A DNA stretch of 64,000 nucleotides. Origin: Podarcis muralis. Lineage: Eukaryota. This document shows, piece by piece, positions 6,063 through 63,190 of the stretch (position 1 is its first letter; every line of letters begins with the position of its first letter). The notes beneath the pieces were generated by a model. That model saw only the letters and a program-made list of their open reading frames with translations, searched no databases and was not told the DNA's origin. The translations under genes were made by a program, and so were the position numbers. The stretch is taken from positions 79,670,001 to 79,734,000 of the forward strand of contig NC_135660.1 in NCBI RefSeq assembly GCF_964188315.1, in the 5' to 3' direction.

Positions 6063-6436
6063 TTAGAATTCACAAATGACTAACCACTCAAGTGGGCAGC
6101 CTCTGTCATGCCATTTGCCATCTTGATGCATTTCTACACAGTTCTCGTTGCCAAGATTATTTGGTTCTCCTGGGGCCCAGTTAGAGTAGCCAATGACGTC
6201 GCCATTCAGGTACTCAAACCTGCCTTCTGTCGCCATGTCATTGATCCCAAGGACTGCTCTTCTGTTATACCAGGTCACTATTTTTTGCAGGGCGCTGTTC
6301 TCTGCCGCATTCCTTGGGGAGGCAAGTGCGCCACCCATGCGCAAGCAGGTCTCACGCGCAGCATCATAATCACCTCTGGATCCATCTGTTTTGAATACCT
6401 TCTCACCAACCATCACGCCGTTGGGGGCAAGGAGAA
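6063..6436 (-). CDS. Gene 1 exon: C-type lectin CRD
   Basis: Acceptor ctctttccag; LLAPNGVMVGEKVFKT..WAPGEPNN..ENC..WHD..C..CEF*; four canonical Cys. Confidence 0.95.
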
Positions 6437-9400
6437 CTGGAAAGAGACAGGATTGCAAGGCTTTCAATCTAATACTGTAAAACGCCAGGTGCATTGATGG
6501 TACGGGCAGCATTTTATATTTCAGTGGAAGGAGAAAGGTTCTCAGTGTGGTTTAAAGCAGAGGAGAGGATGGGAGTAGTGGTTGCACAACGTATGGATGG
6601 CCATCGGCCACGGGTTCCCCATCACTTTTGTGAACTCAAATTGCATCAATAGTAAACTTGAGATGGCAAGAGCTGAGAGGACTCACTTTGTAGGTGAAGA
6701 TTAAGGTATAATTATGATAGATATATAATTTTATTTTTTATTATGATTATGATAATTGATATTATTAATGTTCTTATCTATCTGGTTCCTCTTTTTCCCT
6801 TTAACTTTTCTTGTTCTTTTCTCTTTTAATTTTGTCTTTCTGATCCTATTTGTTCTAGGTATTATTTTACTGTATCGTGAAAACTTTAATAAAATATTTT
6901 GGGGGGAAATAGTCAACTTGAAGCTATATCAGCCTATTTGAACAAAAGCAAGCAATAATTTCCCTTTCTTACCTTTTTGAGTTTTGGTGATGGCAGATTT
7001 CAAACCCTCCAACTCTGTTTCCAAGCCCCTTATTTGTGTTTTAAGGCTTTCCAGCTCTGAATGAGAAAATAGTTGCATTAGATTTCCTGATCAACTGCAA
7101 ACTCCAGAAGTGAACTTTTTCAAAATATGTATGGATAACAATCTATGGCCAAGCTTTCATGTAGCTACAGAGCTGTAGCTTTCATGTAGCTACAGAGTCC
7201 ATCATTTGAGAACAGTGCACCTACTGTAAAACTATAATGTGCCAAGTGGTCCTCAGCTGCTCATTCTTTTAGGTTATTCAAATATTTTTTTACTGTATAC
7301 AAGAAGCAGAATGAACTTCCTCCTCTTTAAAGAAGTCGAAGGGTGTTTGCCAACAGAAACAATAGCTATTCTGTTTCCCAACGTTCAGTATTTCTCTCCT
7401 GTTCTGCCTTCTGTAGGAAGGAAATGTAATACAAATAGTTCTTGAGCTCACTCATCTTGGCTGGTTCACTTGGAAATTTTTCTTCAGGTGCAAATTTTGT
7501 TAACTTCCTGGATGGCGAGTTGAACTTAAATGCCCTCTTGTTTGGAGATGGAATTAAAATAACCTCATGTTAATAATTGCAAGTGACAGATTTGTGCAGC
7601 CAACTATGGGAAGAGAGAGAGACGTTTTTGTGGAGAGTCTGTGCAAGTTTTTGCCCTGCAACAGGACAATAGTAGGTCCAGCTGGAGCCCTCTGGGGAAA
7701 GGGGAAGGGAGAGGACTCAGAGAAACCGCCAAGAGGTTTGCCTCTTAGGGTTGGGACAGTGTCTGCTGTGCAGCTTCTTTTCTCCCAGAGCTCAGAAAGT
7801 GCTTCTGTCTAAGGACCAGTAGCCCTGTGTGTTGGCTCTTAAGATTGCACTAATATTTATTTATTTATTTATTTATTTATTTATACCCCACCCATCTGGC
7901 TGGGTTTTCCCAGCCACTCTGGGCGGCTTCCAACAGAATATTAAAATACAATAGTCTATTAAACATTAAAAGCTTCCCTAAACAGGGCTGCCTTCAGATG
8001 GCATCTAAAAGTCTGGTAATTGTTGTTCTCTTTGACATCTGGTGGGAGGGCGTTCCACAGGACGGGTGTCACTACCGAGAAGGCCCTCTGCCTGGTTCCC
8101 TGTAACGTGGCTTCTTGCAGCGAGGGAACCACCAGAAGGCCCTCGGCACTGGACCTCAGTGTCCGGGCAGAACGATAGGGGTGGTTAATATTTGGATGTG
8201 GCTTCTCTTTTTGCACACACTGACACCACCACATTGGGGGAAGAAAGCCGACAACTGCCTCCCCAGAACCCCTAAGTGAGAAATGTCCACATGTGCACAC
8301 CAGATTAGTAGTAACCACAACGCAGAGTAGTAACCGGGGGGCCACTAGGGAAGATGGCCGACAATAACATCTCTCCGACCCACACGAGGTAATTAAGAGC
8401 CTGGGATGGGAGTATGCAGCCTCCCTGCCCCCCCAAGGGAATGGGGGGGACTGCCCTTGCCTGCTGTGCCCATATACCACCCCCGAATTCGAGGGGGGTG
8501 GGGGCACTAGGCAGAAAGCCCTTGTGTGGACTTTGGCTCTCCTGGACACTGTCTCTGATTCGCTCCACTAGCTGCAGCAACTTCAAAAGAAACAATTAGG
8601 AAGAAGCAAATGCACATATCCTCAAGGAAGAATGGGGAGTAAAGACTGCTAATTGAAGGGATCTCTGAGAAAGAAGACGGGTCGGATAAACAGGAATATA
8701 TCATGAGAAGACACATCAAGGCTTGGTATGTCGGCAACGGGACTGGAAGGGGGGGGGAACTTTCCTTTCTTTCTTCTATGTGATTAACCAATAATCCCCC
8801 CTCACAAGTCAGAAATGCTGCTTTAATGACCTAAGCTGCATGATTTAAGACTGTGTGGAGATAATTTCTAACCAAAAGCATGTTTTAAGGAGATCGTGGA
8901 AACTACAAGAGCTTTGGGATGACGCGGTAAAAAACAGCGTCGCCATTTATGTCTGGGAGGAGGAATGCATTTGTTTTCATACTGTGGGCGAACCTCCTCA
9001 GAGGACTAAAGAAGGCGACAGATTTGCGAAGGTTAATGATGAAAAGAGTGCTTTTATTTATGGAAGTGATGATATATGGAAACCATCTCGATATGGTTAT
9101 TGGACGGACGGAAAAATTCACACAGGATTACAACTTGTGTTTACCTGCTTAAGGAGATTATCAGAAGAGATCACAAAGAAAAAAGAAAAATATATGAAAA
9201 TAACAAGATGAGATGTGGGAACAGTAAGATAGGACTGGATAGAATTGTGAACATTATTTGGACAGATTTGTGGACATTAATGCAGCAGCAAGAAGATGAT
9301 TGGAATCCCCTTCGGAACTTGAAATATGGATACCCCCAACAAAAAATTAAAATTCGGCTTTGTAATTCGGAATTTATGTGATGTGATTTGATTTGATTTG

Positions 9401-11915
9401 ATTTGATTGGTCGGTTAATAAAAAAATATTTTTCTTAAAAAAAAAAGATTAGTAGTAACCAGGGCTTTTTTTCCCAGCCGGAACTTGCCGGAACTCAGTT
9501 CCGACCCCTCTCAGGTGGGTGCCATAGCCATTATAAGAGAACAAGGGAGGCATTCATGGTGAGTTCTGACACTTCTTTTTCAAGAAAAATAGCACTGGTA
9601 GAAACCATACAAGGGCATTTTATTTTTTAGAGGAAGAGAGTTGATTCAGAAGGAGAGAGCATCTTTCCTCATGGAGTCATGACTGGCCCAGAAACCAAAG
9701 GGATATATTTCTTCCTCACTCCTTGACTTTGAGAAGTGTCTGCGGACTTTCGGCCTAAACGTCAAGTCTTTGTATCACTTTTTTGCTAATCTCAATATGA
9801 GGCGGTTTTGAAATTCGATCCTCAATATACTTGCACATTGTAGAAGAAAACACTTTCTTCCAATCTATTTGATTGGAGCAATTGTAATTATGTTAATACT
9901 TTTCTTGCTGATTATGTGCCAGTTATGTGTTATACAGTGACACATTTCACTTTGACCAAATAAAAACATAAGGAGGTCAAACAATGCAATTGATATTGGA
10001 TGGACTACTAGCTCCCCCCCCCCTTTAGATTATAAATCTCTGGTAGGGCTCATATTATTTTTTATTTTTGTACAGTGCCTAGCTGTGTTGTTGCTGATGA
10101 CAATAATAATAATAACAACAACTGACAACAACAGCTTTTACCTGGAAGATTACTGTTTCCACTTGATCCCTTTCCACCTATAGAGCCTTTATCTCCTTCT
10201 GAACCAGGAATGCCAGTTGGTCCTGCTGGACCCTGTAGTCCTTGGGGTATTGGTAATCCTATAAAGAAGACCCAAATCAGTTAACTGATATGTGACTTAA
10301 AAACAACAACAACTCTGTTTTATAGTGCCTATCATTTGAGGTTACGTAGACAGTACTCCGCACTCTTGTGTCAGAACAGTCACCATCTCTCCAATGAGAT
10401 TTTACTTGAGAATTGTGCCTCAGAGTTCTTTGGCTCCTATACTATAGTCCGTTAGTTAAGTGCTGATACCATAGTCCTCCATATTCAGGCATTTATTAGT
10501 TCTATCTGTGGAAGGGCCACAGAGATGTAGGGAGCTGTGAAGCAGACCAGCCTCTTCCTGCTTTGCCAGTCTGATTGGCTCCAGTACCAGCCACGAAGAA
10601 AGCAGATTGGTGCAGTGTTCATAGATCACAGAAGAGTCGGAAGGGACCCTGAGGACCAACCCCCTGCAATGCAGGAATATGCAGCTGTCTCATATTGGGG
10701 ATCAAACTTGCAAAGCTGGCGTTATCAGCACCATGCTCTAACCAATGGAGCAATCCATCAGTTGGGATAGCTACCAACTATCCAGCTATCCCTTGGCTTC
10801 CCCAGTCCAATATCAGAAGCCTGGTACCCTTTGCTAGCCTGAGCAAAGGACACTCGAGTGCACAGAATGCGGCGAGGGGCAAGACCTGGGTAGGGCTTGG
10901 CAAGGTGGACTGAGAAGACTGGTGGGTTGCATTTAATCAGTGGGCTGCAAGTACCTCAACCCTTCTGTAGCATGTTAAACACCAGCTTGAGCATTGTGGC
11001 AGGAGCTTTTCGCTTATTTGATCTGCTATATGTGTCTTTGATTTTAGTGCATGTGATGAAGTAGCCTGTGGTTTACCTAAATTACAGTAGCACAACACCA
11101 CAGAGCCTAGGGCTTGCCGATCAGAAGGTCAGCAGTTCGAATCCCCACGACGGGGCGAGCTCCCGTTGCTCGGTCCCTGCTCCTGCCAACCCAGGAGTTC
11201 GAAAGCACGTCAAAGTGCAAGTAGATAAATAGGTACCGCTCCGGCGGGAAGGTAAATGGCGTTTCCGTGCACTGCTCTGGTTCGCCAGAAGTGGCTTAGT
11301 CATGCTGGCCACATGGCCCGGAAGCTGTACTCCGGCTCCCTCGGCCAATAAAGCGAGATGACCCCAGAGTTGTCCGCGACTGGACCTAATGGTCACGGGT
11401 CCCTTTACCTTTACGTGTCTTTGTTTTATTTTAGTGCATGTGATGAAGTAGCCTGTGGTTTACCTAAATTACAGTAGTTAGATATTCTAGCCTTATGAAA
11501 TACTATATTACCATAAAATAGTTCTTCCTGACATTGCTGCTATAAGGAACAGGAAGCTGCCCTGTCCCCCATTTCCTGTCACAGGGGCTTTGATCTATTG
11601 TCGTTAGCTAAAAAAAGAGCCCACACATACTTGCTCCAAGCTTGTATATGAGAACAGAGTGGATCAAGCTTATATAGAAGTTATTTACCCCATATTTACC
11701 CCAAAGTGCACAAAAAGAGAGTGCACCCTCCCCATAAATGTTCTGGTACCTTGATCTCCCTCTTCTCCTTTTGGTCTGGTCTCAGCAGATGCACATATAA
11801 CTAATGTACAAGCATTAGGAACCCATCCTGGCAGAAAAAGCCTTGGAGCAGAGCTGGTGGTTCTCTGCAGAGATGCTCCCCTTACCAATGGAGAAAGTAT
11901 TAGAAGTATCAGCAT
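6063..11915 (-). CDS. Collectin gene 1: SP-D-derived short-collagen collectin, 4 coding exons, predicted 246 aa
   Basis: Exons 11750-11915 (166 nt, MLILLILSPL..NACTLVICASAETRPKGEEGDQ), 10142-10258 (117 nt collagen), 6973-7056 (84 nt neck) and 6063-6436 (374 nt CRD, EPN..WHD..CEF*). All junctions are GT-AG, phase 1; the sum of 741 nt is an open frame. Confidence 0.9.
6973..7056 (-). CDS. Gene 1 exon: 84-nt coiled-coil neck
   Basis: cattcag/AG..AAAG/gtaaga; encodes ELESLKTQIRGLETELEGLKSAITKTQK with a heptad pattern. Confidence 0.92.
7851..8185 (-). mobile_element. L2-type LINE 3' end
   Basis: (TTTA)n tail; the minus ORF ends ..QRAFSVVTPVLWNALP..FRCHLKAALFREAF, typical of the L2 ORF2 C-terminus. 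Confidence 0.85.
8336..9445 (+). mobile_element. Apparently complete ~1.1-kb non-autonomous L1-type retroelement
   Basis: 5' G-run + AAGATGGCCG; 3' (GATTT)n, AATAAA at 9417 and poly(A); 16-bp TSD agattagtagtaacca at 8302-8317 and 9446-9461; no long ORF. Confidence 0.75.
9460..9597. mobile_element. hAT-type MITE
   Basis: TIRs cagggc../..gcactg; 8-bp TSD gtagtaac/gtagaaac. Confidence 0.8.
10142..10258 (-). CDS. Gene 1 exon: 117-nt collagen exon
   Basis: tttatag/GA..CCAG/gtaaaa; encodes GLPIPQGLQGPAGPTGIPGSEGDKGSIGGKGSSGNSNLP. Confidence 0.9.
11091..11414 (+). mobile_element. Sauria SINE (5' end slightly truncated)
   Basis: Diagnostic ..gttcgaaagcacgtcaaagtgcaagtagataaataggtaccgc.. and (ACCTTT)n tail. 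Confidence 0.92.
11750..11915 (-). CDS. Gene 1 exon: signal peptide + N-terminal Cys region + 2 Gly-X-Y
   Basis: ATG at 11915, 16 nt inside an acceptor (ttttag at 11932-11937). NACTLVIC matches the SP-D N-terminus. Donor is CAAG/gtacca. Confidence 0.85.
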
Positions 11916-20136: not shown

Positions 20137-20507
20137 TCAAAATTCGCACATTATTAACCGAGCCACATTGCATGAGATGTCATTCCATTTGCCATCTGGA
20201 TACAATTCTATGCAGTCCTCTTCCACCCCATTGGGTTCTTTTGGTGCCCAGTTTGAATATTCCATTGTTTCACCATTAAGATGCTTGAAGATGCCTTCTG
20301 TCTCCTGGTCATTCATTCCAAAAAATACTTTTCTTCCCATTTTTGCAGAGAGTTTCAGTGCAGCATTGTTTTCATTTTCATTCCTTGGAGAAGCAACCTG
20401 GCCACCAAAATGGTTACACGTCGCTTTTGAAGTCTCATAATCACCGTCATCTCCATTAGTCACAAATAGTTTCCCTCCTACTCTTGTGCTGTTTGAGAAA
20501 ATGTAAC
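20137..20507 (-). CDS. Gene 2 exon: C-type lectin CRD
   Basis: Acceptor cattctag; YIFSNSTRVGGKLFVTNG..EPNGVEEDC..WND..CEF*. Confidence 0.95.
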
Positions 20508-23497
20508 CTAGAATGGCTAACAGACAATACAATCAAAATTAATTATTTCAAATGTGCTTTCGTCATTAATAGCCCAAATTTAGGACCTGGGCCTGATTCA
20601 TACAGCAATTGCTGTACATTTAGTTGCTCAAATGAGTGGTTTGGTTGCATTAAGGACTGTGTAATGTCAGAGGATGATATTAATGGCAACCCGTACATCT
20701 TTCATCAAGGTACACAAACAACTAGCTTACCTTTCTGGGTTTTGCTTGCAGTCAGCTGCAAAGCCTTCAGCTCTCCTTGTAAATCACTGATTTGAGTTTT
20801 GAGCAGCTCAAGTTCTAAAAGGCAAAAGGACAGTATTGTTCTTGTTCTGTTTGTGTTAAAGTATAAAAGATTGCAAAGGAATCTGCTTCAGAAGTGACAA
20901 ATCTCAAATCCACCATTGCCCTTCTCCCTGCCCCATTCAGTTTCTCATTGTCTTAATTCCAGAAGAGTGTTAGTCTTTGCAGCAAAATCAGCAGTGTCTT
21001 GGCAGAACTTAAAGACTAGCAAATGTAATGTCGCATGCATTTTTGTGGTTCAGAAGAGCTCACCTCATCAGATGCATAAAGTTGATAGTGTACACAATGA
21101 ACCATCCATCAAGGAACAAGGAAACTATTTTCAAACTATAACAAATCAGGTCAGGTCTGGTTCAGACTCCACTCACCTCCCTTACCTAACCATAGTGATG
21201 TTGAGGCCACAATCATAGCAGGCTGAAAAAAATGGCACCATACTTCCTTGCTCATCGAATCATAGAACCGTAAAGTTGAAGAGACCACAAGAGTCATCTA
21301 GTCCAACCCCCTGCAATGCAGGAATCTTCTGTCGAAGGTGCGACTCAGCCCCACAACCCTCAGATTTAAGAGTCTCATGTTCTACAGGCTGAGCTATCCC
21401 AGCTCATGTGTATGTGTATGAATTGGTAGTGTCACATGGGACTTTATATGAGACTGTTTGCTTCCATCAACTAGAATCTGCTTGAATCAATAAATGAAAC
21501 ATTTCTGTTGTTGATTGAAGTAGCAGTCCTAAAGAATCATGGGAGTACAAGGCCTCAGTTTAACCAGACTGATTTTGCAGCTGTAATCAATTGGCCATTT
21601 TAATTAAGACAGATATCTAAAGCAACTCTAGACTTTAATACACTTATATTTCAATAAAGACATTTCCTCTCCCATCGTTTGGAATGTTTTACTTTTCGCA
21701 TGGAACCACAAAGTTTAGATTCTTATTAGCCTTGTGTATAGAACCCAGACAAATTTCAGTAAAATCTCTTGGCTTGTGTGTGTCTGCAGTTGTCCACATC
21801 CCTTACCTTTTCCTCCACATTCACCTTTCTGACCACTTTCCCCTTTAAGGCCAGGAGGCCCAGCTTTTCCTGGGAGTCCCTGCATTCCTCGTAAACCTGC
21901 CATTTAATCCAATGGATAAACAGAAAAAGATGAACTAATGAGCAACATAATGCATGGGCATTCTTAGGTTATAGTTAAACATATGAATACACCAACAAAT
22001 AGTTATTTGAAAGGGCATTCTGCGGGAAACTGGGGGTCTTCATTGTTGCCCAAGTGTGCTCTGTGTTCCACCTCTTTGGAGGAGAGTGACCAGCAGTCTT
22101 TTCTAGTTGTGTTATTTGAGATCCCTTTTTTGTGGAGAACCACAGATGGAACATGGGGCCTCCTCCATGCCAGGTATGTGCTTTGATTTCCTCCTAATAC
22201 TGAGAGAGCAACCAAGATGATCAAGGGTCTGGAAACCAAGCCTTATAAGGAACAATTGAGGGGATTGGGTCTGTTAGCCAGGGAAAGAGGAGACAGGGGA
22301 GATCTGGTAGCCATCTTCAAATATCTCAAGGGCTGTCACATGGAAGATGGAGCAAGCTTGTTTTCTCCAGCTCTGGAGGGTAGAACTCAAACCAATGGCT
22401 TCAAGTTACAAGAAAGGAGATTCCGGCTAAACATCAGGAAGAACTTTCTGACAGTAAGAGTTGTTCAACAGTAGAATGGAATCCCGAGGGAGGATGTGGT
22501 CTCTCCTTCGTTGGATGGTAATCTGTCATTAAGATTACCGCCTTAAGAGCGGCAAGCCACACTCCCTGAGCCAGCCGATAGGCTGGCCAGGGTATGACGC
22601 GGCAGAAGATTCCCCCTGTATGCGTGAGGCTGAGAGCCAGCCTCAGTGCGGGAGTTGGGGGCGGGAAGCCCGCAAACCCACCTCCTCCCTAGGGTCAGAA
22701 ATGGCTTTAGTTGATTTAAAGACTATTTACAGAAATACTGTAAAATTAATGAATGTTAGAAAAATGTTGGAATGAAGTTATATGGCTTTAGTAGAAATGT
22801 TATAAGGAATTAAGTATAAATAGATTACTAGAGCATTAAAGGGAGAAATAAGGTTAAAATGTGTTAAGATAATTATAGGATAGAAAATAGAGGAAGATGG
22901 AAAGGAATTGCTGAAACAATCAATAGACGTGGAATACAAAAAGGGAGGTGTGAGGAGGTCGTGGAAATTAGCGAAAGAAGGATAAAATATTGAAATTGGA
23001 CTGTGTTTTAAATGGTTTTTGTTTTGTTTTGTTAGTTGTATGTTAGTGTTTTCTTTTTTATTATATTGTATTGTATTATTGTATGTTTTTTTCTTTTTTG
23101 GTTTTTTGTAGTGTTGTGTTCAATTTGTTGGAAAACTAATAAATATTATTATATAAAAAAAGAGGAAATGGCTTTAGTTGAGATCTTTGCATTGCAGGGA
23201 GTTGAATATATAGCCCTCAAGGTCCTTTCCAACTTTACAGTTCTATGATTTTATGACTACCATTGGATAACTCTTGGAAATTCCTTATGCCATACCTTGC
23301 TCTCCCTTTTCACCTTGAGGACCTTCCTTCCCATCTCTTCCTGGCAGTCCATTGCTCCCAGGGATGCCTGGCAATCCATTGCTTTCAGGAATAACCATGC
23401 AGGCTGGCACTTTCTCTTCACAGTTGCATTGCTCCGGATCTGACATTCTCACCGATGACGCTCCCAGCACAAGAATGCAGAGGACATGGCGTTGCAT
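20137..23497 (-). CDS. Collectin gene 2: mannose-binding-lectin-like, 4 coding exons, predicted 248 aa
   Basis: Exons 23296-23497 (202 nt), 21807-21896 (90 nt, GLRGMQGLPGKAGPPG, like [17 protein letters not shown]), 20731-20814 (84 nt neck) and 20137-20507 (371 nt CRD, EPN/WND). The sum of 747 nt is an open frame. Confidence 0.9.
20731..20814 (-). CDS. Gene 2 exon: 84-nt neck
   Basis: ccttttag/AA..AAAG/gtaagc; encodes ELELLKTQISDLQGELKALQLTASKTQK. Confidence 0.92.
21253..21405 (-). mobile_element. tRNA-Lys-headed SINE with CR1-type tail
   Basis: Minus strand ..gatagctcagcctgtagaacatgagactcttaa..; tail ..gcagggggttggactagatga..ttctatgattc. Confidence 0.8.
21807..21896 (-). CDS. Gene 2 exon: 90-nt collagen exon with MASP-type motif
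   Basis: atggcag/GT..AAAG/gtaagg; encodes GLRGMQGLPGKAGPPGLKGESGQKGECGGK. Confidence 0.92.
22200..23255 (+). mobile_element. CR1 LINE 3' end, interrupted by two younger insertions
   Basis: ORF2 C-terminus MIKGLETKPY..FRLNIRKNFLTVRVVQQ; the CR1 tail resumes at 23165-23255. Confidence 0.9.
22715..23164 (+). mobile_element. L1-type 3' fragment nested in CR1
   Basis: 17-bp TSD gaaatggctttagttga at 22698-22714 and 23165-23181; FKDYLQKYC-like ORF end, AATAAA and A tail. Confidence 0.85.
23296..23497 (-). CDS. Gene 2 exon: signal peptide + Cys region + collagen start
   Basis: Acceptor gccttag at 23514-23520, ATG at 23497; [48 protein letters not shown]; donor CAAG/gtatgg. Confidence 0.85.
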
Positions 23498-43502: not shown

Positions 43503-46500
43503 ATTATTTATACCCTGCCCATCTGGTTGGGGTTCCCCAGTCACTCTGGTCAGCTTCCATCACATTTGAAAACATAATAAGATGTCTAACATTAAAAACT
43601 TATTGATACAGGATTTTTAAAATAAAAAAAAACCCTAGCAAGTTAGTTGGTAGGTGGCTTCTGTTTTCCTATGCATGTTAATATCTGATAAACAGCCATA
43701 GCCAATTGGTTTAAAAGGCTGTATGCAGGAGCAGTGTGAACAAATCACCCATCTTTTCTTTTCGTTAACCGGAAAGGAGTGTCAGAGGTTGACATGGAGC
43801 AGAAGCTTGGCATTACACCTGGCACCCCTGGGGCAGAGCCCTTCTGCACTGGTAAGGCGAGTTGCCATTTTAAATTTCCTACAGTGACATGGAAAGTTCT
43901 GGAGCCTCGTGGAGTATTGAAACAGCAGTCCCGGGGGGGGGGGGGAGTGAGTACAGACATTTTCAATGCTCAGTATGCCCTGGAGTGATGCTTTATTCGG
44001 GGTATTGTGGGGAATTTAAAATGATCATTTTTTCATTGCAGGTGGAGTCCCACTGACCTGGGAGGGCATTCAATCCTAGGGCAATTTGCTCCTCAAATTC
44101 AGACCTGAATCTGAGGAGTTCCAGTTTCCTTAAAAAAAAAAAAAGTCATCTAAGTTAGTGGCCAGCTGAAAATCCCTCAGACTAACTATGCACTACATCA
44201 AGAAGTTATTTCTGTTGTCTCTTCGGAACCTTTCTCTTTTTTAAAAAAAAATAATTTTTATTAAATTTTCCATTTTAACAATTCAATCAAATCACATTAA
44301 ATATTCCAAATTATAAAAATACATATCATATAGTCTGAATATTCTGCCAAATTATAAATTTTTATTGGGGCCTCCCATGCTTCAAGTTTGGTGGGGCTCT
44401 GATCATCTTATATCTCTACTGCCTTGAGTTTCCAACAGTTCTTTTAATTCTTCCTGTTGTTACCTTTCCTTTGTTCATGGCCTCTGAGTTGTTTCCACAG
44501 GCAAGTTGAAGTAAGCAATGATATGCTTCTGTGTGAAATTTGTCTGCCTATTGTTTGCTGTATATCCTCACACGCTGGTGTTTATGCCGAATTAATCCAA
44601 CTCTTTGGAACCTTTCTCATGCCATCAGAATGTTTGTTCAGATGCACCTTTTCGTCCACATCACTTACCTCTTTCTCCCACATCTCCTTTCGCTCCCTTT
44701 TCGCCCACTGGGCCTCTGTCGCCTTTGGGCCCAGCCACACCTGTGTCACCTTTGGGACCTTGGGCACCAGTAGCTCCTTTTGAACCTACAGAAATATTGA
44801 ATGGGGAGGGGAGAATCAACAAAAATGGAAGGTACTTTGTAATTATGACAAATGCAAAAGTAGGTAAATAGTTTCAGCTCAGCCCTAGTTTGTCTGTCTG
44901 TCTGTTGTTGTTGTTCCTATGCTGCCCTTCATCCAAAGATCACAGGGAAGTTTACAATATAAAAGCACAAAAATACACACAATAGTAACAAAATACCAGC
45001 CCACCTATGCGGTTTAAAAGGTCATAGATCAGGCATAGGCAAACTCGGCCCTCCAGATGTTTTGGGACTACAACTCCCATCATCCCTAGCTAACAGGACC
45101 AGTGGGCAGGGATGATGGGAGTTGTAGTCCAAAACATCTGGAGAGCCGAGTTTGCCTATGCCTGTCATAGATGGTTTAATTAGCCAAAGGCTGGGAGAAG
45201 AGGAATGCTTTTGCCTAAGATATGTAACAAAAGTGCCAGGCAAGCCTCTCTGGAGAGGGCATTACACAAACAGGGAGCCTGGTCTCATGTTGTTGCCCTC
45301 TGGGCTTCTTGTAGCGGAGGCTCATGAAGAAGGGCTTCAGATGATGATTGCACTGTCTGGCTCAGCTCATATGGGAAGAGGCAGCCTACATCTTAGGTTA
45401 GACATTCTCACAGAAATGATAGCTCCAGTGTTTATATACTATGTTTTGTACTGAGGATATGATAGTCACAATTTTATATCTAGGGGGTAGTCCTGTTAGT
45501 CTGGTATACCAAAACAATGATGAGGCTATGGTACTGCAGAGCAGGGGTAGTCAATATGGTTCCCTCCCAAGGTGAGCTACAACTTACACCATCTTTGCCA
45601 TTGGTTTTGCTGAATGGCGCTGATGGGTTCCAACAACCTCCCATGTTGACTACCCCTGCCTTAGAAACTAGCAAATATATCATAGCACAAGCTTTTCTGG
45701 ACTAGTGTCAGATGCATTTGATGAAGTGGCCTTTATCACTACATTTTATAACTTGCATGTTGCCAGAACATGACTTCAGAAGCTGGCTGTCACAGATCAC
45801 AATCTTTTTGTGACCTCAGCCAATTGCCTAACAATGGGAGTCAAGCTTGAGAGCTGTCAGCCTATGATGTATTTGCTTGTTCTTTCATTGGCATCCACGA
45901 TGGATGTACAGTGGTACCTCTGGTTAAGAACTTAATTCATTCTGGAGGTCTGTTCTTAACCTGAAGCACCACTTTAGCTAATGGGGTCTCCTGCTGCCGC
46001 TGTGCCGCCGCTGCACAATTTCTGTTCTCATCCTGAAGCAAAGTTCTTAACCCGAGGTAATATTTCTGGGTTAGTGGAGTCTGTAACCTAAATGTATGTA
46101 ACCTGAAGCGTATGTAACCCGAGGTACCGCTGTATATATAGAGGGAAACATCAGAGGTATGGGCATTTTATGGTTGCTTTCTCCACTCACATAACATTTA
46201 TAACTTGGAAACTGTACCATACTAAGTATCTTGACAACAGGGTGGATGTGAACATTTAAAATCTGTGACTGGGATCCAAAAAAGCTACTTAGGCATGCTT
46301 AAGGACTTGGACTGACATTTAGGTCTTTTTACTTCTTTTGTTGGATGGTAGGTCTCCGGGGATAACACAAATGGCTGTTTGAGAAGCAGAAGCCCCCAAC
46401 CCCACTGGGTGTGCAGAAGTAGTTGTATGCTCCTTTGGATCCTGGCCACTGTGGTATATTGAACCCTCTTGCAGAAATCCAACTATTTAGCACTTAGGAT

Positions 46501-47442
46501 TACCTGTTTCTCCCTTGACGCCTTTTTCACCTTGTGGGCCATTGTTGCCTTGTGCTCCAGAGGGGCCGACGCTTCCTGGAGGACCCTGCAAACCTCTGAT
46601 TCCACGCGGTCCTACTCAAAAGAAAGCGGTTTTGTGAGCAGGCAGAGATATACACCAAAGGGGGAAGGTCTCTTGTGATGAGTTGCAGTGCATCAGGGGC
46701 TCCTGGGCCTTAGAACTGGGAACACTGAAATGTGCATGCCATTGTCCCAATCTGGTATGCCTTCAGAGTGGTGGAGGACGCTGTCCTAACACTAGTGTTG
46801 AAATAAGTTTCAACTGGAAGTCTGGTGAGGTTCTATACATGGACTGGGGTATGGGCACCATCTTGTCTTTCATCTCAGGCAGCAAAATGTTTTGGGCCAG
46901 TCCTGTACTGGGAGCAAGGGAAGAGCACCTTGGTGGGTTTGTACTCTCGTCCAGGGAAAATGTTTGATGCCATCAATCGGCAGGATGGCCCTCTAACAAG
47001 ACTTAGAGACAGATGTGGATAAAAATATTAAAGAAGTTTGATTTCTTCTAATAATATCTAGCTTTTGTTGAATTTGATGCAATACAATTCCATTTAGTCA
47101 ACAACACTCCTTACCCATTGATCCAGCATCTCCTTTGGGTCCTTGCTCTCCTTGGGTCCCCTTTTCTCCTTGTGGTCCAGCTGGTCCCATTTTTCCAGGA
47201 GGACCAAGAATTCCTCTTGGTCCTGCCAACCCTGGCATTAAGTGGAAGAATGAAAAGTGGGGTTATCTTAATGATAAAGCTTACATATGTGAGGAATGCA
47301 ATACATAATAACCCAAGGGAGAAGTTTATTGAGAGGTGGGCCTTGTTTTTACTTTTCTGGAATGACAGTGGAAATGATATTTCCCCTTTTAACTTATGCA
47401 CGATACTATAGGGTCTTTGTTATGTTGTCCCTTTCTCCTTTC

Positions 47443-47508: not shown

Positions 47509-49322
47509 CTGCATGGGAAGCAAACATGTTTGATGTACAGCTTAATGGTTTTGGCTACATATTGTTATAATATCATATTAAAATCTTTAAAAAGAGGGGG
47601 AAAGTGGTTTACTAAGTGGGTGAACAAGAGGCACTTGTGATGAACACAAGGCTGATAAATTACTGGCAAATCAGTTAAATGAAACGATCTCATGCCAGTT
47701 TCAGTTTAAAGATGCTAAGACAAGAAGCAATGCATAGATTCCAGTCTTGGGTCATCATCATTGCTAAGTTATCTAGGGTTGCCATATTTCAAAAAGTGAA
47801 AATCTGGACGGAGAAGTTGTTGAGCTTTTTTGGCCATACAGTGGTACCTTGGGTTAAGAACTTAATTCATTCTGGAGGTCCGTTCTTAACCTGAAACTGT
47901 TCTTAACCTGACGTACCACTTTAGCTAACGGGGCCTCCTGCTGCCACCGTCGCCACACAATTTCTATTCTCATCCTGAAGCAAAGTTCTTAACCCAAGAT
48001 ACTATTTCTCGGTTAGCGGAGTCTGTAACCTGAAGCGTCTGTAACCCGAGGTACCACTGTAGTTGCAAAAACGACACTGCCGACATTGGTTGCCATATTT
48101 CTGTCTTGACATTTAGCCGATTTCCACCCAGACACTGCTTCTGACTACAGTATTCCAGGTATGTCTGGGAAATTCTGGGTGTATGGCAATCCTAAAGTTA
48201 GCCAAGGCAGCTACATTCAAGGTGGCTGTGGCTGTTGCCATACATCCACCAGATGACATTCCCACCCCCTCCCTATATTTGCTTTCTCCTCTTCTGCCTT
48301 TTCCTTCTCTGTTTGGCATCATGTCCCTCTTAATCCAGGAGAAATGCAGAACATCATGCGGTCTTGCACTTCTAGCCCTCACTGTTGATGGACCTACACC
48401 GTAATCTTTACAGTATCAATTTGAAAACTTAAGATTCATTTTTATATTGATGTCATGCAACTTTGCTTTTATGTTGTCTTGGTAGAATTTTTATGCTGTT
48501 TGCATGTCCAGGCGCTGTGACTCTGCTGCCCCTACCCAGTGGAGAAAAACCAGTCAAGACACATTCTTTTAAGTTGAATAAGAGCACTGCTTTATTGGTT
48601 GCAGATGTAAGAGGTTTGTCATAGGCACTGGGTATAACAACCAACCTGCCTGCTGGAAGTATCTTCTCCATGGGGTCTACCCTGAGGCAAGGAGGTCCTA
48701 TGACTTACATCAAATAGGTATATCTCTGCCAGGATCTCCACTATGGCTCTGGCCCTCACCTGGGAATCTGGATAGAAGCATCTCCTCCAGTATCCTTTTA
48801 ACAGGATACCCCTTTCCCTTGAAAGGGCAGCAAGAGGCTTACAACCTCCCCTCCAACCAAGACTAAGGCTTTTACCTTCAGGTGGTGGTTTAGGCACTGG
48901 ATAAGCCTAAGTCATGGCCAGAGAAGAGGTTGTCTTAACATTGAAAACTAAATGATATTTATCACAAGGCAATGTAATTGGGGGTCATCATGAAGTTGCA
49001 TCATAAGCTGCTTTTGCTTAAATTAGGTGGGACTGCATGGTTTACTGTCTTTCCCCTCCTCCAGTGTGTGAATCAAAAGCTGATCCTCAAAGAACGGGAG
49101 CTCTTAGGAAGTCACCTTTTCCATACCTTGTTCTCCCTTGTCTCCTTTTGGTCCTTGGACTCCATCTCTCCCATTTATCCCTGGTAACCCTTTCTCAGCT
49201 GGTCCACATACAACCAGTGAGCAGGCATTCCGATCCAAGTTCTGGATAACTTGCGGTGAGCCCTGGAACGATGCTGGTGAAAATTGCGAAACCAACACAG
49301 AGAGCGTTAGAAGCACCAGCAT
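41029..49322 (-). CDS. SFTPD: Pulmonary surfactant protein D (collectin gene 4), 7 coding exons, predicted 371 aa
   Basis: Exons 49127-49322 (196 nt; [17 protein letters not shown] vs human NACTLVMCSSVESGLPG), collagen exons 47115-47231 (117), 46504-46611 (108), 44669-44785 (117) and 43314-43430 (117), neck 42420-42503 (84) and CRD 41029-41405 (377; [11 protein letters not shown] identical to human SP-D). The sum of 1116 nt is open, and the architecture matches mammalian SFTPD. Confidence 0.88.
41575..41936 (+). mobile_element. Sauria SINE, full length, different subfamily 3' part
   Basis: Starts gggacgcgggtggcgctg; TSD tatg(c/t)agaagcaaga at 41557-41571 and 41937-41951; the 3' part (ggcctatagagtgag..ggcccgtacgggcagg) differs from the other copies. 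Confidence 0.93.
42420..42503 (-). CDS. SFTPD: SFTPD neck exon (84 nt)
   Basis: tttctcag/AG..AAAG/gtaaat; encodes [28 protein letters not shown]. Confidence 0.92.
43314..43430 (-). CDS. SFTPD: SFTPD collagen exon D (117 nt)
   Basis: ctccatag/GA..TCAG/gtaagg; encodes [39 protein letters not shown] (human ends GDKGAKGESGLP). Confidence 0.92.
43450..43625 (-). mobile_element. L2-type 3' tail
   Basis: (AAAT)n followed by taccctgcccatctggttggggttccccagtcactctgg, as at 7851. Confidence 0.75.
44236..44450 (-). mobile_element. L1-type 3' UTR fragment
   Basis: The minus strand ends ..gtgatttgattg..aataaaaaattattttttttt aaaaaa, resembling the tail of 8336-9445; boundaries approximate. Confidence 0.6.
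44669..44785 (-). CDS. SFTPD: SFTPD collagen exon C (117 nt)
   Basis: ttctgtag/GT..AGAG/gtaagt; encodes [39 protein letters not shown]. Confidence 0.92.
45030..45164. mobile_element. Palindromic hAT MITE
   Basis: Exact TSD tcatagat. Confidence 0.92.
45909..46132. mobile_element. Tigger-like MITE family A
   Basis: TIRs plus TA TSDs. Confidence 0.9.
46504..46611 (-). CDS. SFTPD: SFTPD collagen exon B (108 nt)
   Basis: ttttgagtag/GA..ACAG/gtaatc; encodes [36 protein letters not shown]. Confidence 0.9.
47115..47231 (-). CDS. SFTPD: SFTPD collagen exon A (117 nt, carries PGKMGP)
   Basis: aatgccag/GG..ATGG/gtaagg; encodes [39 protein letters not shown]. Confidence 0.92.
47447..47497 (+). repeat. 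(CT)n microsatellite
   Basis: Directly visible. Confidence 0.95.
47839..48059. mobile_element. Tigger-like MITE family A
   Basis: TIRs plus TA TSDs. Confidence 0.9.
49127..49322 (-). CDS. SFTPD: SFTPD exon: signal + N-terminal CxxxxC + 7 Gly-X-Y
   Basis: Acceptor cccccag at 49339-49345, ATG at 49322, donor CAAG/gtatgg. Confidence 0.88.
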
Positions 49323-56606: not shown

Positions 56607-56642
<36 letters not shown>

Positions 56643-56740
56643 AATAATAATAATAATTTATTATTTATACCCCGCCCATCCGGCTGGGTTTCCCCAGCCA
56701 CTCTGGGCGGCTTCCAACTGAATATTAAAAACAGTACAGC

Positions 56741-56901
56741 NNNNNNNNNNNNNNNNNNNNNNNNNNNNNNNNNNNNNNNNNNNNNNNNNNNNNNNNNNNN
56801 NNNNNNNNNNNNNNNNNNNNNNNNNNNNNNNNNNNNNNNNNNNNNNNNNNNNNNNNNNNNNNNNNNNNNNNNNNNNNNNNNNNNNNNNNNNNNNNNNNNN
56901 N
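56741..56901. other. Assembly gap (161 N) between L2-like tails
   Basis: Run of N; the left flank is (AAC)n(AAT)n plus an L2 tail. Confidence 0.99.
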
Positions 56902-61658: not shown

Positions 61659-61667
61659 ATTCTGAAT

Positions 61668-62008
61668 TTAGGGGATAAAGGAAAATTCACAAACAGTGAG
61701 GAGCTTCTCTTTGCATGATGTAGAGTGCCACTTTCCATCTTTGGCAGCTTTTGTACAGTTCTTAGATCCATCAGAGTTGCTTGGTTCCCCAAATGCCCAG
61801 TTTGTGTATGCGTCAAAATTGTGGCCCGTAACATAGGCCGATTTCTCATGCCTCTTCAACACACTCTGCAAAGCGTTGGCCTCAGCCTCCTTCTTCGGAG
61901 AAGGAACATGACCGCCAGCGGCGAGACAGGTGGCACTGAGCGTTTCGAAGTCCCCTTCACCAAGATTTGTGGTGTATAACCTTTCACTGCCAGTTCCAAA
62001 ACTGCGAG
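61668..62008 (-). CDS. Gene 5 exon: degenerate CRD
   Basis: Open frame RSFGTGSERLYTTN..CLAAGG..YTNWAFGEPSN..C..GKWHSTSC..CEFSFIP*. Confidence 0.88.
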
Positions 62009-63190
62009 CTGGAAATACAGGAGACAATCATTCCAATAATTTCAAATGCTCTGCTGCTACAAGTTGGTTGATATAGACCCCAATATTCACGATGCACTAT
62101 GGAGCAACTTAAGTGAAAGACCCAAGCAGCTTACGATCTGAGATCAGATGTGGAGGACGGCAATGGAGAAGCAAAGGGCAATGCACCTTATTTAAAGAGT
62201 AGGAGGTTAAAAATTAAAACTGTTGTTGTTGTTTAGTTGTTTAGTCATGTCCGACTCTTTGTGACCCCATGGACCAGAGCACGCCAGGCACTCCTGTCTT
62301 CCACTGCCTCCCACCGTTTGGTCAAACTCAAAAATTAAAACTAGCAATGTTCTAATATGCTATGAGTCTATTTTCAGCAATTTGTAAACACGGAATCCTG
62401 TGTTACGTTGGAAATGAACAGGAACTCAGTAATGGCAGGCAAGATTGCTGAGGAAGCATTGGTTAAGCACTCAATCTGTAGCTGCAGGAGAGCTTTAGGT
62501 ACCTACCATTGGTGTCTCCTTCAGATGCTGTTTATTTTTAGTTATTAAATTTCTCCCATAATTCCTGACCATTGGCTACGCTGGCTGGGGCTGATGGGAG
62601 CCCTAGTCTATCAACAGCTGGAGGGCACTATGTTGACAGTCTCTGACCCATTCAAACCCGAGAGCATAACCCAGAATCTCTGGCAAGACACACATACCTC
62701 CCAACATTTCTCCAATGAAATAGGGACATTCTAAGGAAAAGCGGAACATTCTGGAATCTAATCAGAAAGCTGAACGGCTTCTGTAAATTTGGGACTGTCC
62801 TGGAAAATAGGGACGTCTGGACACAATGTTTCCGCAGCATAGACATTGTACCTTGGGACACTTGTTTCCTCATCAAAGTGAAAATCACTAGCCAAGACCA
62901 GGAATTATTTTTATCAACATTTCAATATTGTGATAACTCCCAAATCCTAAATACTTAAAAAAAAAAAAAAATCTTTAAAAGCTGGCAGCAAACATAACAT
63001 ACTGAGTGTAATTCTAAAGTGGACCACTTAATGGAAATCCACATTGAAAAGAATCTAGGATTCTGGGAAAGGTTTGAGGGAAATAACATACTTCCAGCTG
63101 TCTTACCTTTATGGACTGTAAAAAAAGCATTGTCTAGTGCGTCCAATTTTATTTTCAAATGGTTCACAGTTTCTTCCAAACTGTGTACTC
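61668..63190 (-). CDS. Collectin gene 5 (partial, 5' exons beyond window): neck + non-canonical C-type lectin domain
   Basis: Neck exon 63107-63190 (84 nt, cctttcag/GA..AAAG/gtaaga) splices in frame to the CRD exon 61668-62008 (341 nt, acceptor tatttccag). The CRD reads EPS..WHS..CEFSFIP* and keeps all four Cys. Confidence 0.85.
62222..62329 (-). mobile_element. Bov-B extreme 3' end (108 bp)
   Basis: 13-bp TSD aaaaattaaaact at 62209-62221 and 62330-62342; (AAC)n tail. Confidence 0.92.
63107..63190 (-). CDS. Gene 5 exon: 84-nt neck
   Basis: Encodes GVHSLEETVNHLKIKLDALDNAFFTVHK; GT-AG, phase 1. Confidence 0.88.

What the first reader, a model, noticed from the sequence alone, without database searches (positions are those of the whole stretch)
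6063..63190. Five-gene collectin array built on one SP-D-type exon scaffold but with mixed-and-matched functional modules
Seen: five co-oriented collectin genes, all with an 84-nt neck exon and phase-1 junctions. They differ in collagen length (about 15, 19, 19 and 58 triplet positions for genes 1-4), N-terminal Cys count (2, 3, 1, 2), presence of the PGKxGP motif (no, yes, yes, yes) and CRD motif (EPN/WHD, EPN/WND x3, EPS/WHS). Known: in human the neck exon is 84 nt in SFTPD and shorter in MBL2 and SFTPA; an SP-D-derived expansion is well known in cattle (conglutinin, CL-43, CL-46). Inference: this is an independent squamate radiation of SP-D-scaffold collectins forming a modular innate-immune system (long-stalk SP-D, complement-coupled short forms, altered-specificity and decoy forms). 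Equal neck lengths leave heterotrimer formation open.
Basis: partly seen in the sequence, partly recalled or inferred. Interest (0 to 1): 0.85.

Follow-up and report, generated by a model that had tools for sequence, protein, structure and literature searches.

The report
Lizard collectin gene cluster, old paralogues
This stretch of wall-lizard DNA holds five neighbouring immune-lectin genes (surfactant protein D, three short relatives and a collagen-free relative of the snake blood protein that blocks venom phospholipase), which are real and expressed but are old, squamate-wide genes rather than a recent lizard burst copied from surfactant protein D.

Summary
Five intact, co-oriented minus-strand genes each have an 84-nt phase-1 neck exon, and the Cys counts, PGKxGP motifs and CRD motifs are as reported. 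RNA contigs from four runs confirm every junction of gene 1.

The window is Podarcis muralis, and the array continues past both edges. True MBL starts 449 nt beyond the left edge, followed by an SP-A-like gene. So genes 1-3 really are extra collectins.

- **Gene 4** is the 1:1 SP-D orthologue.
- **Gene 5** is not a collectin. It has no collagen exon and belongs to the snake PLA2-inhibitor-alpha (PLIα) family, with 51% identity to Elaphe PLIα-like protein. It also sits next to SP-D in a gecko.
- **Genes 1-3** are each squamate-wide orthogroups, found from geckos onward (gene 2: from iguanians and anguimorphs).

A bovine-style origin from squamate SP-D is rejected (AU p=0.00015). In the ML tree, gene 3 pairs with a turtle gene, gene 2 with an echidna gene, and gene 1 with the whole SP-D clade.

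The 84-nt neck exon also occurs in lizard and turtle MBL, so it is not an SP-D signature. There are two scaffolds: SP-D-type (genes 4 and 1) and MBL-type (genes 2 and 3).

Gene 1's WHD motif is conserved across lizards (WHN in snakes).

The parts
11750..11915 (-). g1 coding exon 1: signal peptide, SP-D-type N-terminus (NACTLVIC, 2 Cys), 2 Gly-X-Y
   Evidence: Model. RNA joint 10257|11749 in X1, X3, X25. N-terminus is conserved in all squamate orthologues.
10142..10258 (-). g1 exon 2: 117-nt degenerate collagen exon (13 triplet positions, 2 without Gly)
   Evidence: Included whole in RNA contigs. Most similar to the last SP-D collagen exon: 68% nt, 39% at X/Y positions.
6973..7056 (-). g1 neck exon, 84 nt, phase 1/1
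   Evidence: RNA joints 7056|10142 and 6436|6973.
6063..6436 (-). g1 CRD exon, EPN...WHD
   Evidence: WHD is conserved in all lizard orthologues; snakes have WHN.
23296..23497 (-). g2 exon 1: signal, 3-Cys MBL-type N-terminus (CNCEEKVPAC), 9 triplets
   Evidence: 94% identical to P. raffonei P0330 and 60% to turtle clade A.
21807..21896 (-). g2 exon 2: 90-nt collagen exon with PGKAGP
20731..20814 (-). g2 neck exon, 84 nt
20137..20516 (-). g2 CRD exon, EPN/WND
   Evidence: The whole model is 96% identical to, and the same length as, P0330. dN/dS 0.185.
35906..36062 (-). g3 exon 1: signal, N-terminus with 1 Cys, 6 triplets
   Evidence: Orthologues in Rhineura, Sceloporus and Eublepharis keep 3 Cys.
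34772..34879 (-). g3 exon 2: 108-nt collagen exon with PGKAGP
   Evidence: Same length as MBL exon 2.
32706..32789 (-). g3 neck exon, 84 nt
30743..31119 (-). g3 CRD exon, EPN/WND
   Evidence: The P. raffonei gene at this place gives a 241-aa product, as my model does. dN/dS 0.067.
49127..49322 (-). g4 (SP-D) exon with start codon, N-terminus NACSLVVC, 7 triplets
47115..47231 (-). g4 collagen exon, 117 nt, carries PGKMGP
   Evidence: The motif sits at the same place in turtle, crocodilian and several squamate SP-D.
46504..46611 (-). g4 collagen exon, 108 nt
44669..44785 (-). g4 collagen exon, 117 nt
43314..43430 (-). g4 last collagen exon, 117 nt
42420..42503 (-). g4 neck exon, 84 nt
41029..41405 (-). 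g4 CRD exon, EPN/WND
   Evidence: The protein is 76% identical to Pogona and Tiliqua SP-D and 67% to Chrysemys SP-D. It nests in the squamate SP-D clade at 100/98.
63937..64000 (-). g5 (PLIα-like) exon 1, partial: signal peptide and short N-terminus; runs off the window
   Evidence: P0364 residues 9-29 match at 100%. Donor GTACGT after 63937, phase 1.
63107..63190 (-). g5 neck exon, 84 nt, directly after exon 1 (no collagen exon)
   Evidence: The snake PLIα neck is likewise a separate exon (PMC5175389).
61668..62008 (-). g5 CTLD exon: EPS / E-to-K / WHS, 13-residue deletion, C-terminal CEFSFIP
   Evidence: Orthologues are annotated as PLIα-like. Swiss-Prot PLIα proteins are the top 26 hits.
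56741..56901 (.). assembly gap (N), intergenic between g5 and g4
   Evidence: No exon lies within 4.7 kb. Repeat-like flanks.

Best explanation
The window is the central part of the Podarcis muralis collectin locus. All genes share one strand, in the order PLIα-like (g5), SP-D (g4), two MBL-type short collectins (g3, g2), then an SP-D-type short collectin with a decayed collagen stalk (g1). True MBL and an SP-A-like gene follow just past the left edge.

The genes are old tandem paralogues. Each is a conserved orthogroup across Squamata and is kept under purifying selection. None is a recent copy of squamate SP-D.

Differences between them arose mainly by loss or decay of collagen exons and by point changes at the Ca2+/sugar site, on two ancestral scaffolds:
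- **SP-D-type:** g4 and g1.
- **MBL-type:** g2 and g3.
- g5 has lost collagen entirely.

Inferred working:
- All five products are secreted and trimerise through the 28-residue neck coiled coil.
- g4 acts as classical long-stalk SP-D.
- g2 and g3 are mannose-type (EPN/WND) lectins with a MASP-type PGKAGP site, so they probably feed the lectin complement pathway alongside true MBL.
- g1 is a trimer with a short or absent stalk. Its Ca2+ site-2 Asn is replaced by His in all lizards examined, which implies an altered, conserved ligand or metal dependence.
- g5 is a Ca2+-independent, non-lectin binding protein of the PLA2-inhibitor-alpha type.

Shown here: gene structures, orthology and synteny, g1 transcription, and motif conservation. 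Inferred: oligomer state, complement coupling, ligands and PLA2 binding.
For: Identity and neighbours:
- L002 1-9552 equals window 9552-1 at 100%.
- MBL (P0279) starts 449 nt beyond the window, followed by a 258-aa collectin whose exon 1 resembles SP-A.

Orthologues:
- g2: 96% P. raffonei, 69% Varanus, 62% Anolis.
- g3: 71-74% Rhineura, Sceloporus, Eublepharis.
- g4: 76% Pogona SP-D, 67% Chrysemys SP-D.
- g1: 63-73% from geckos to Rhineura.
- g5: PLIα-like proteins from gecko to snake.

Trees:
- Orthogroups are supported at 100/99-100.
- SP-D clade including mammals and g4: 99/94.
- MBL clade: 100/99.
- g1 joins the whole SP-D clade at 95/80, g3 joins turtle clade A at 95/86, and g2 joins echidna at 97/92.
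- AU test rejects derivation from squamate SP-D (p=0.00015).

Synteny:
- PLIα-like followed by a 373-aa gene (SP-D-sized; its identity was not checked) in Paroedura.
- g1-type followed by MBL in Thamnophis.
- Short collectin followed by MBL in Macrochelys.
- g3-g2-g1 in P. raffonei.

Expression: all three g1 junctions are seen in RNA contigs of 3-4 runs. Word shares of 0.10-0.18 fit spliced mRNA for g4 and g1.

Constraint: dN/dS is 0.185 for g2 and 0.067 for g3. WHD is conserved in all lizard g1 orthologues; snakes have WHN.

g5: the top 26 Swiss-Prot matches are all snake PLIα or PLIα-like proteins, at 40-51% identity over the full length. SP-D follows at 27-29%.
Against: - The trees are unrooted and lack mammalian MBL-A/MBL-C, SP-A and avian SP-A/lung lectin, so deep relations are provisional.
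- Neck+CRD alone places g1 with turtle clade A (94/75), whereas full length places it with SP-D.
- AU tests do not reject a single squamate clade of g1+g2+g3+PLIα (p=0.33 and 0.062) or g1 with squamate SP-D (p=0.055).
- RNA junctions were checked only for g1.
- The g2, g3 and g5 models rest on splice sites and on matching annotated relatives.
- The SP-A call rests on exons 1-2 and my memory of human SP-A.
- No biochemical function was tested.
Confidence: 0.78

Rival explanations
1. One reading: an independent squamate radiation of SP-D-derived collectins, analogous to bovine conglutinin/CL-43/CL-46, all built on one SP-D exon scaffold.
For: - All four extra orthogroups contain only squamates in my sampling.
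- RefSeq calls most of them 'SP-D-like' or 'collectin-43-like'.
- CRDs of g1, g3 and g5 score higher against SP-D than against MBL or SP-A in PDB.
- Monophyly of g1+g2+g3+PLIα is not rejected (p=0.33; p=0.062).
- g1 does carry an SP-D-type N-terminus and an SP-D-like collagen exon.
Against: - A clade of these genes with squamate SP-D is rejected (dlnL 93.5, p=0.00015).
- SP-D of mammals, turtles, crocodilians and squamates forms one clade without them (99/94).
- The 84-nt neck exon also occurs in lizard and turtle MBL.
- g2 and g3 have MBL-type N-termini and collagen exons.
- Turtle, crocodilian and echidna relatives interleave with them.
- CRDs are only 38-54% identical to one another.
Confidence: 0.12
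2. g2 and g3 are additional MBL genes. They would be co-orthologues of the mammalian MBL-A/MBL-C pair, not a separate collectin lineage.
For: - N-terminus with three Cys.
- 18-19 triplets.
- PGKAGP motif.
- Exon 2 of g3 is 108 nt, as in MBL.
- Collagen-exon X/Y identity to MBL exon 2 is 43% for g2.
- They lie 2-3 genes upstream of MBL, with g1 between.
Against: - The bird, turtle and squamate MBL clade (100/99) excludes them.
- The g2 CRD scores 108 bits against SP-D and 96 against human MBL, whereas the true lizard MBL scores 123 against human MBL and 110-113 against SP-D.
- Mammalian MBL-A/C could not be included in the tree.
Confidence: 0.12
3. Some of the genes (g1 with its decayed collagen, g5 with its lost Ca2+ site) are decaying pseudogenes or annotation artefacts.
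For: - Two of the 13 triplet positions in g1 exon 2 lack Gly.
- g5 lacks four of the five Ca2+ ligands and 13 residues.
- An older P. muralis model, P0355, splices g1 differently.
Against: - Reading frames are open and splice sites canonical.
- g1 is spliced exactly as modelled in four RNA runs.
- Both genes are conserved from geckos to snakes, with WHD fixed in lizard g1 (WHN in snakes).
- g5's features are exactly those that define the PLIα family.
Confidence: 0.03

Closest known systems
Surfactant protein D (SFTPD)
   Same: g4 shares these features: a 2-Cys N-terminus, 58 uninterrupted triplets in 117/108/117/117-nt exons, an 84-nt neck exon, an EPN/WND CRD, and a place in the amniote SP-D clade. 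g1 shares the N-terminus type and one SP-D-like collagen exon.
   Different: g4 carries PGKMGP in its first 117-nt exon, as do turtle and crocodilian SP-D. Eutherian SP-D lacks it there. g1 has only one decayed collagen exon and WHD instead of WND.
Mannose-binding lectin (MBL)
   Same: g2 and g3 share these features: four coding exons, a Cys-rich N-terminus, 18-19 triplets, PGKAGP, an 84-nt neck exon (as in lizard and turtle MBL) and EPN/WND.
   Different: They lie outside the MBL clade (100/99). The true MBL is a separate gene downstream of g1. Their CRDs are nearer to SP-D than to MBL.
Bovine conglutinin / CL-43 / CL-46 (SP-D-derived expansion)
   Same: Extra collectin genes lie tandem to SFTPD. 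Some have shortened collagen (CL-43 resembles g1).
   Different: The bovine genes nest within mammalian SP-D. In my PDB searches conglutinin scores like SP-D. The lizard genes do not nest within squamate SP-D (AU p=0.00015) and are far older.
Snake serum phospholipase A2 inhibitor alpha (PLIα) and PLIα-like proteins
   Same: g5 shares these features: a precursor of about 170 aa, no collagen, a helical neck encoded by its own exon, a CTLD without Ca2+ ligands, and a hydrophobic C-terminal CEFSFI(P). It is 51% identical to Elaphe PLIα-LP and 40-45% to viperid PLIα.
   Different: It occurs in a non-venomous lacertid. PLA2 inhibition is untested. PLIα-LP of non-venomous snakes is reported as inactive against PLA2 (PMC5364564).
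Chicken lung lectin / avian SP-A2 (collagen-less collectin relatives)
   Same: Like g5, these are neck plus CRD without a collagen stalk, encoded in the collectin locus.
   Different: According to the literature these are SP-A-like (PMC12077231). No sequence was available to test this here. g5 groups with PLIα, not with SP-A-type CRDs, in the PDB scores.

Membership tests
Collectins (collagenous C-type lectins) | Collagen-like Gly-X-Y domain | tested here: met
   g2 has 19 triplets, g3 has 18 and g4 has 58, all uninterrupted. g1 has 15 positions with 2 non-Gly (marginal). g5 has none, so g5 fails this feature.
Collectins (collagenous C-type lectins) | Alpha-helical coiled-coil neck followed by a C-type CRD | tested here: met
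   All five genes have an 84-nt neck exon and Pfam Lectin_C. PDB matches to SP-D neck+CRD reach E=1e-15 to 1e-48.
Collectins (collagenous C-type lectins) | Intact Ca2+ site 2 (EPN/QPD, Glu, WND) | tested here: inconclusive
   Intact in g2, g3 and g4. g1 has WHD (Asn to His), conserved across lizards. g5 has EPS, Lys and WHS, so the site is lost. Binding was not assayed.
SP-D orthologue (g4) | Falls in the amniote SP-D clade with SP-D exon structure and collagen length | tested here: met
   Squamate SP-D clade 100/98 within the SP-D clade 99/94. 58 triplets in four 108-117-nt exons. 67-76% identity to annotated reptile SP-D.
MBL orthologue (g2, g3) | Falls in the MBL clade and occupies the MBL position in the locus | tested here: not met
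   The MBL clade (100/99) excludes them. P0279, downstream of g1, is the MBL.
Lineage-specific SP-D expansion (bovine type) | Extra genes nest within the lineage's own SP-D | tested here: not met
   AU test: dlnL 93.5, p=0.00015 against g1+g2+g3+PLIα with squamate SP-D. For g1 alone with squamate SP-D, p=0.055.
PLIα (alpha-type PLA2 inhibitor) family (g5) | Collagen-less precursor of about 165-170 aa with a neck helix and a CTLD lacking Ca2+ ligands | tested here: met
   Exon 1 joins directly to the neck exon. Ligand positions are S, K, H, S. The family description is in PMC5364564 and PMC5175389.
PLIα (alpha-type PLA2 inhibitor) family (g5) | Closest sequence relatives are bona fide PLIα proteins | tested here: met
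   The top 26 Swiss-Prot hits of the P. raffonei orthologue are PLIα or PLIα-LP (40-51% identity, full length), ahead of SP-D at 27-29%. The clade with a snake PLIα-like protein has 100/100 support.
PLIα (alpha-type PLA2 inhibitor) family (g5) | Trimer that binds and inhibits group II PLA2 | not testable with these tools
   Needs protein biochemistry.

The most novel reading that the evidence does not exclude
The squamate collectin locus may preserve an ancient amniote set of short collectin paralogues, of SP-D type and MBL type, that therian mammals and birds have lost. Two unusual products would have arisen from it before crown squamates diverged:
1. PLIα, the snake 'self-antivenom' protein. 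On this reading it is an exapted gene of the collectin locus, already present in geckos and lacertids and therefore older than snake venom PLA2.
2. A collectin class (g1) with a decayed stalk and a His at the Ca2+/sugar site fixed across all lizards examined, pointing to a new binding chemistry.
Probability: 0.4. Interest if true: 0.62.

Novelty: new member of a known kind. Interest (0 to 1): 0.45.

Why it matters
- It gives a checked gene map of a reptile collectin locus. Lizards keep SP-D, which birds are reported to have lost (PMC12077231), together with MBL, an SP-A-like gene and three further short collectins.
- The map makes complement coupling of sauropsid SP-D and of the short forms directly testable.
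- It places the gene family of the snake PLA2 inhibitor alpha physically inside the collectin locus, next to SP-D, in non-venomous lizards. That bears on how venom resistance proteins originate.
- It corrects an attractive but wrong analogy with the bovine SP-D expansion.
- It shows that the 84-nt neck exon is an ancestral feature, not an SP-D marker.

Tried and rejected
- **Representative-protein search with the five-CRD profile.** The best 150 hits were almost all multi-CRD receptors. Only three collectins were usable.
- **SP-A, lung lectin and mammalian MBL-A/C landmarks.** None could be obtained:
  - Duck and green-turtle MBL loci had no neighbour within 10 kb.
  - Garter-snake and leopard-gecko MBL loci did not reach SP-A.
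  - The Atlas search with the SP-A-like exon 1 returned only generic collagens.
- **Malaclemys locus.** The 'gene' spans 97 kb but holds a single CRD, so the annotation is mis-joined and gives no array map.
- **Erythrolamprus PLIα-like protein.** It is not on record for a locus look-up.
- **AF2 model of the PLIα-like protein.** Confidence was low (pLDDT 62). I used only the sequence identities from the Foldseek table, not the TM-scores.
- **Module shuffling ('mix and match').** The only conflict is g1's SP-D-type N-terminus against its neck+CRD placement near turtle clade A. This conflict is not significant (AU p=0.265).
- **The upstream start codon annotated in P. raffonei g1 (MDQTKNPN...).** It has no counterpart in the window. 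I keep the ATG at 11915.
- **Literature searches.** I found no description of the squamate locus or of PLIα next to SFTPD.

Full report
**What is in the sequence**

The window has one N run, at 56741-56901. Five C-type lectin CRD exons lie on the minus strand, ending at 6063, 20137, 30743, 41029 and 61668. Pfam Lectin_C E-values range from 1e-12 to 1e-24.

A scan for AG...GT exons found exactly one well-formed 84-nt, phase-1/phase-1, heptad-rich neck exon upstream of each CRD. I assembled exon models with canonical splice sites throughout:

| Gene | Exon lengths (nt) | Protein |
|---|---|---|
| g1 | 166+117+84+374 | 246 aa |
| g2 | 202+90+84+380 | 251 aa |
| g3 | 157+108+84+377 | 241 aa |
| g4 | 196+117+108+117+117+84+377 | 371 aa |
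| g5 | neck 84 + CRD 341 | partial in window |

Triplets are 15, 19, 18 (not 19) and 58. N-terminal Cys counts are 2, 3, 1, 2. PGKxGP is absent in g1 and present in g2-g4. CRD motifs are EPN/WHD, EPN/WND three times, and EPS/WHS.

The CRDs are only 38-54% identical to one another. No other collectin-like piece exists in the window. The assembly gap is intergenic and repeat-flanked, 7.4 kb from the g4 start-codon exon and 4.8 kb from the g5 stop, so no frame crosses it.

**Where the window comes from, and what flanks it**

A locus fetched for a lacertid MBL protein (P0279) overlaps the window at 100% identity: L002 1-9552 equals window 9552-1. The window is therefore Podarcis muralis, OZ076959.1.

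In that locus the true MBL gene starts 449 nt beyond the window's left edge. It is followed 8 kb on by a 258-aa collectin gene. Exon 1 of that gene reads [33 protein letters not shown], which I recognise from memory as SP-A-like.

The transcribed order is therefore g5, g4, g3, g2, g1, MBL, SP-A-like. From memory, this is the mammalian order SFTPD-MBL1-SFTPA with extra genes added.

P. raffonei has g3 (241 aa), g2 (251 aa) and g1 in the same order.

**Gene 4**

- It is 76% identical to Pogona and Tiliqua SP-D and 67% to Chrysemys SP-D.
- It has the SP-D exon plan.
- It nests in squamate SP-D (100/98) inside an SP-D clade that includes mammals (99/94).

It is the 1:1 SP-D orthologue.

**Gene 5**

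A profile search with the g1 and g5 CRDs returned 167-170-aa squamate proteins annotated as 'phospholipase A2 inhibitor alpha-like'. They come from gecko (Paroedura) through lacertids, iguanians and Rhineura to a snake.

Residues 9-29 of the P. raffonei protein match window 63938-64000 exactly. The exon ends at 63937 with a GTACGT donor in phase 1. The signal-peptide exon therefore splices straight to the neck exon, and there is no collagen exon.

The CTLD lacks 13 residues and four of the five Ca2+ site-2 ligands. It ends in CEFSFIP.

Reviews describe PLIα in just these terms (PMC5364564 and PMC5175389):
- a trimer held by a helical neck;
- the neck encoded by its own exon in the habu gene;
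- a CRD-like domain without Ca2+ ligands;
- a hydrophobic C-terminal core.

The AF2 model was weak. Even so, the Foldseek table against Swiss-Prot lists 26 snake PLIα or PLIα-like proteins first. Identity is 51% to Elaphe PLIα-LP and 40-45% to the viperid inhibitors, all colinear over the full length. SP-D follows at 27-29%.

In the gecko Paroedura, the PLIα-like gene is followed 7.6 kb downstream by a 373-aa gene on the same strand (SP-D-sized; its identity was not checked), as in the lizard.

**Genes 1-3**

- **g2** has orthologues at 96% (P. raffonei, same length as my model), 93% (Lacerta), 69% (Varanus), 67% (Elgaria) and 62% (Anolis).
- **g3** has orthologues at 71-74% in Rhineura, Sceloporus and the gecko Eublepharis.
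- **g1** has orthologues throughout Squamata. Geckos carry them as 'collectin-43-like' proteins at 63-67%. Snakes carry a divergent 246-aa form.

In the garter snake, the g1-type gene sits 8.4 kb upstream of MBL, as in Podarcis.

There are two N-terminus types:
- **NAC[ST]LVVC:** SP-D, the g1 group, and one turtle/crocodilian group.
- **C.CE.K...C (three Cys):** the g2 and g3 groups, a second turtle group, and an echidna gene.

The g1 collagen region is decayed in every squamate, and no Gly-X-Y periodicity is left in geckos or snakes. The g1 WHD motif, by contrast, is conserved in all lizards examined; snakes have WHN.

The single collagen exon of g1 resembles the last SP-D collagen exon: 68% nt, and 39% identity at X/Y positions against 14-18% for the other SP-D exons. 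Exon 2 of g2 is most similar, at X/Y positions, to exon 2 of g3 and of MBL.

P. muralis g3 has lost two of the three N-terminal Cys that its orthologues keep.

**Phylogeny**

| | Neck+CRD tree | Full-length tree |
|---|---|---|
| Data | 155 columns, 90 rows | 256 columns, 86 rows |
| Model | LG+C20 PMSF | LG+C20 PMSF |
| Main result | Split at 97/81: {PLIα, g2+echidna, g3, g1, two turtle/crocodilian groups} against {amphibian genes, MBL, SP-D} | g1 sister to the whole amniote SP-D clade (95/80); g3 with turtle clade A (95/86); g2 with the echidna gene (97/92); PLIα apart (100/100) |

AU tests:

| Constraint | Data | Result |
|---|---|---|
| g1+g2+g3+PLIα with squamate SP-D | neck+CRD | dlnL 93.5, p=0.00015 (rejected) |
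| g1+g2+g3+PLIα as one clade | neck+CRD | p=0.33 |
| g1+g2+g3+PLIα as one clade | full length | p=0.062 |
| g2+g3 as sisters | full length | p=0.24 |
| g1 with all SP-D | neck+CRD | p=0.265 |
| g1 with squamate SP-D only | full length | p=0.055 |

A bovine-style origin from the lineage's own SP-D is therefore excluded. An older origin shared with turtles and monotremes is favoured but not proven.

In the snapping turtle, a clade-A short collectin lies 5.6 kb upstream of true MBL. Short collectins beside MBL are thus not confined to squamates.

**The 'SP-D scaffold' argument**

The neck exon of true MBL is 84 nt and phase 1 in P. muralis and Chelonia, and 90 nt in duck. MBL exon 2 is 108 nt, as in g3. 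The 84-nt neck is therefore ancestral to the MBL/SP-D group in sauropsids and does not mark SP-D descent.

As a calibration, the lizard MBL CRD scores 123 bits against human MBL and 110-113 against SP-D. The g2 CRD scores 96 and 108. So g2 is not an MBL by its CRD.

**Expression and constraint**

RNA-run contigs hold 0.10-0.11 of the words of the g4 region and 0.18 of the g1 region, as expected for spliced mRNAs.

Laying four runs from three studies on 5950-11940 gave these joints: 6436|6973, 7056|10142 and 10257|11749. All have GT..AG ends on the minus strand. They are exactly my g1 model, including the whole decayed 117-nt exon. One contig continues into a 5' exon upstream of about 11933. 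The alternative splice of the older P. muralis model P0355 was not seen.

dN/dS against P. raffonei is 0.185 for g2 and 0.067 for the g3 neck+CRD. For g1 exons 1-2 there were too few changes to judge.

The marine-iguana femoral-gland proteome reports 'three orthologs of SFTPD' (PMC8143647). This fits several of these proteins being made in lizards.

**How it most likely works**

- **Shown:** an old tandem family with five intact genes, at least g1 transcribed as modelled, and each conserved across Squamata.
- **Inferred from family knowledge:**
  - All products are secreted and trimerise through the neck.
  - g4 is classical SP-D.
  - g2 and g3, with EPN/WND and PGKAGP, probably bind mannose-type glycans and MASPs.
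  - g1 is a trimer with little or no stalk and a conserved His at the sugar/Ca2+ site, so its ligand or metal dependence has changed.
  - g5 is a Ca2+-independent PLIα-type binding protein. Its target in a lacertid is unknown.
- **Untested:** heterotrimers remain possible. Habu PLIα is reported to have two subunit types.

**Limits**

- There are no SP-A, lung-lectin or mammalian MBL-A/C sequences in the trees, and no root.
- The only tuatara sequences retrieved fell inside the SP-D clade; none grouped with g1-g3 or PLIα.
- RNA junctions were checked for g1 only.
- The SP-A call is partial.
- I found no paper describing this locus or PLIα's position next to SFTPD. All the genes are, however, already predicted in RefSeq under homology-based names.

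Noticed in passing
beyond window left edge; L002:10001-15351 and L002:23394-25351: The true MBL gene (P0279, 243 aa; exons 168+108+84+CRD) starts 449 nt past window position 1. Downstream of it is a 258-aa collectin whose first two exons look like SP-A. The locus therefore has at least seven genes.
   Followed up: partly
window 47115-47231 (g4 first 117-nt collagen exon): The PGKMGP motif of lizard SP-D sits at the same position in turtle, crocodilian, Pogona, Varanus and Phrynocephalus SP-D. It is missing there in eutherian SP-D. It is thus an ancestral sauropsid feature, not a lacertid novelty.
   Followed up: partly
window 35906-36062 (g3 exon 1): P. muralis g3 keeps one N-terminal Cys. Rhineura, Sceloporus, Phrynosoma and Eublepharis orthologues have three (C.CE...C). 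This may be a change in oligomerisation restricted to lacertids.
   Followed up: no
window 6973-7086 and 10142-10258: An older P. muralis protein model (P0355, 226 aa) uses an internal donor in the 117-nt exon and an acceptor at 7086. RNA contigs of four runs show only the 7056|10142 junction.
   Followed up: yes
window 1878-2502 and 12962-13631: Two copies of a retrotransposon ORF tail (…ESWTIKKADR…RSAWRALVHGVTKSRTRLND) lie in the window. SINE-like segments at about 7750-8350 and 10950-11550 show very high RNA-contig depth, which comes from repeats elsewhere and not from g1.
   Followed up: no
P0170 (Pogona), P0151/L009 (Malaclemys), P0385 (Elgaria): Several public models of these genes are mis-joined. 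Pogona P0170 fuses g3-like and g2-like parts. The Malaclemys 'gene' spans 97 kb but holds one CRD. Elgaria P0385 has a g2/g3-type 5' half with a CRD near the g1 clade.
   Followed up: partly
window 56741-56901: The assembly gap lies inside repeat-like intergenic sequence. A microsatellite lies just to its left (ORF 56428-56721 encodes a poly-T/poly-I run).
   Followed up: partly
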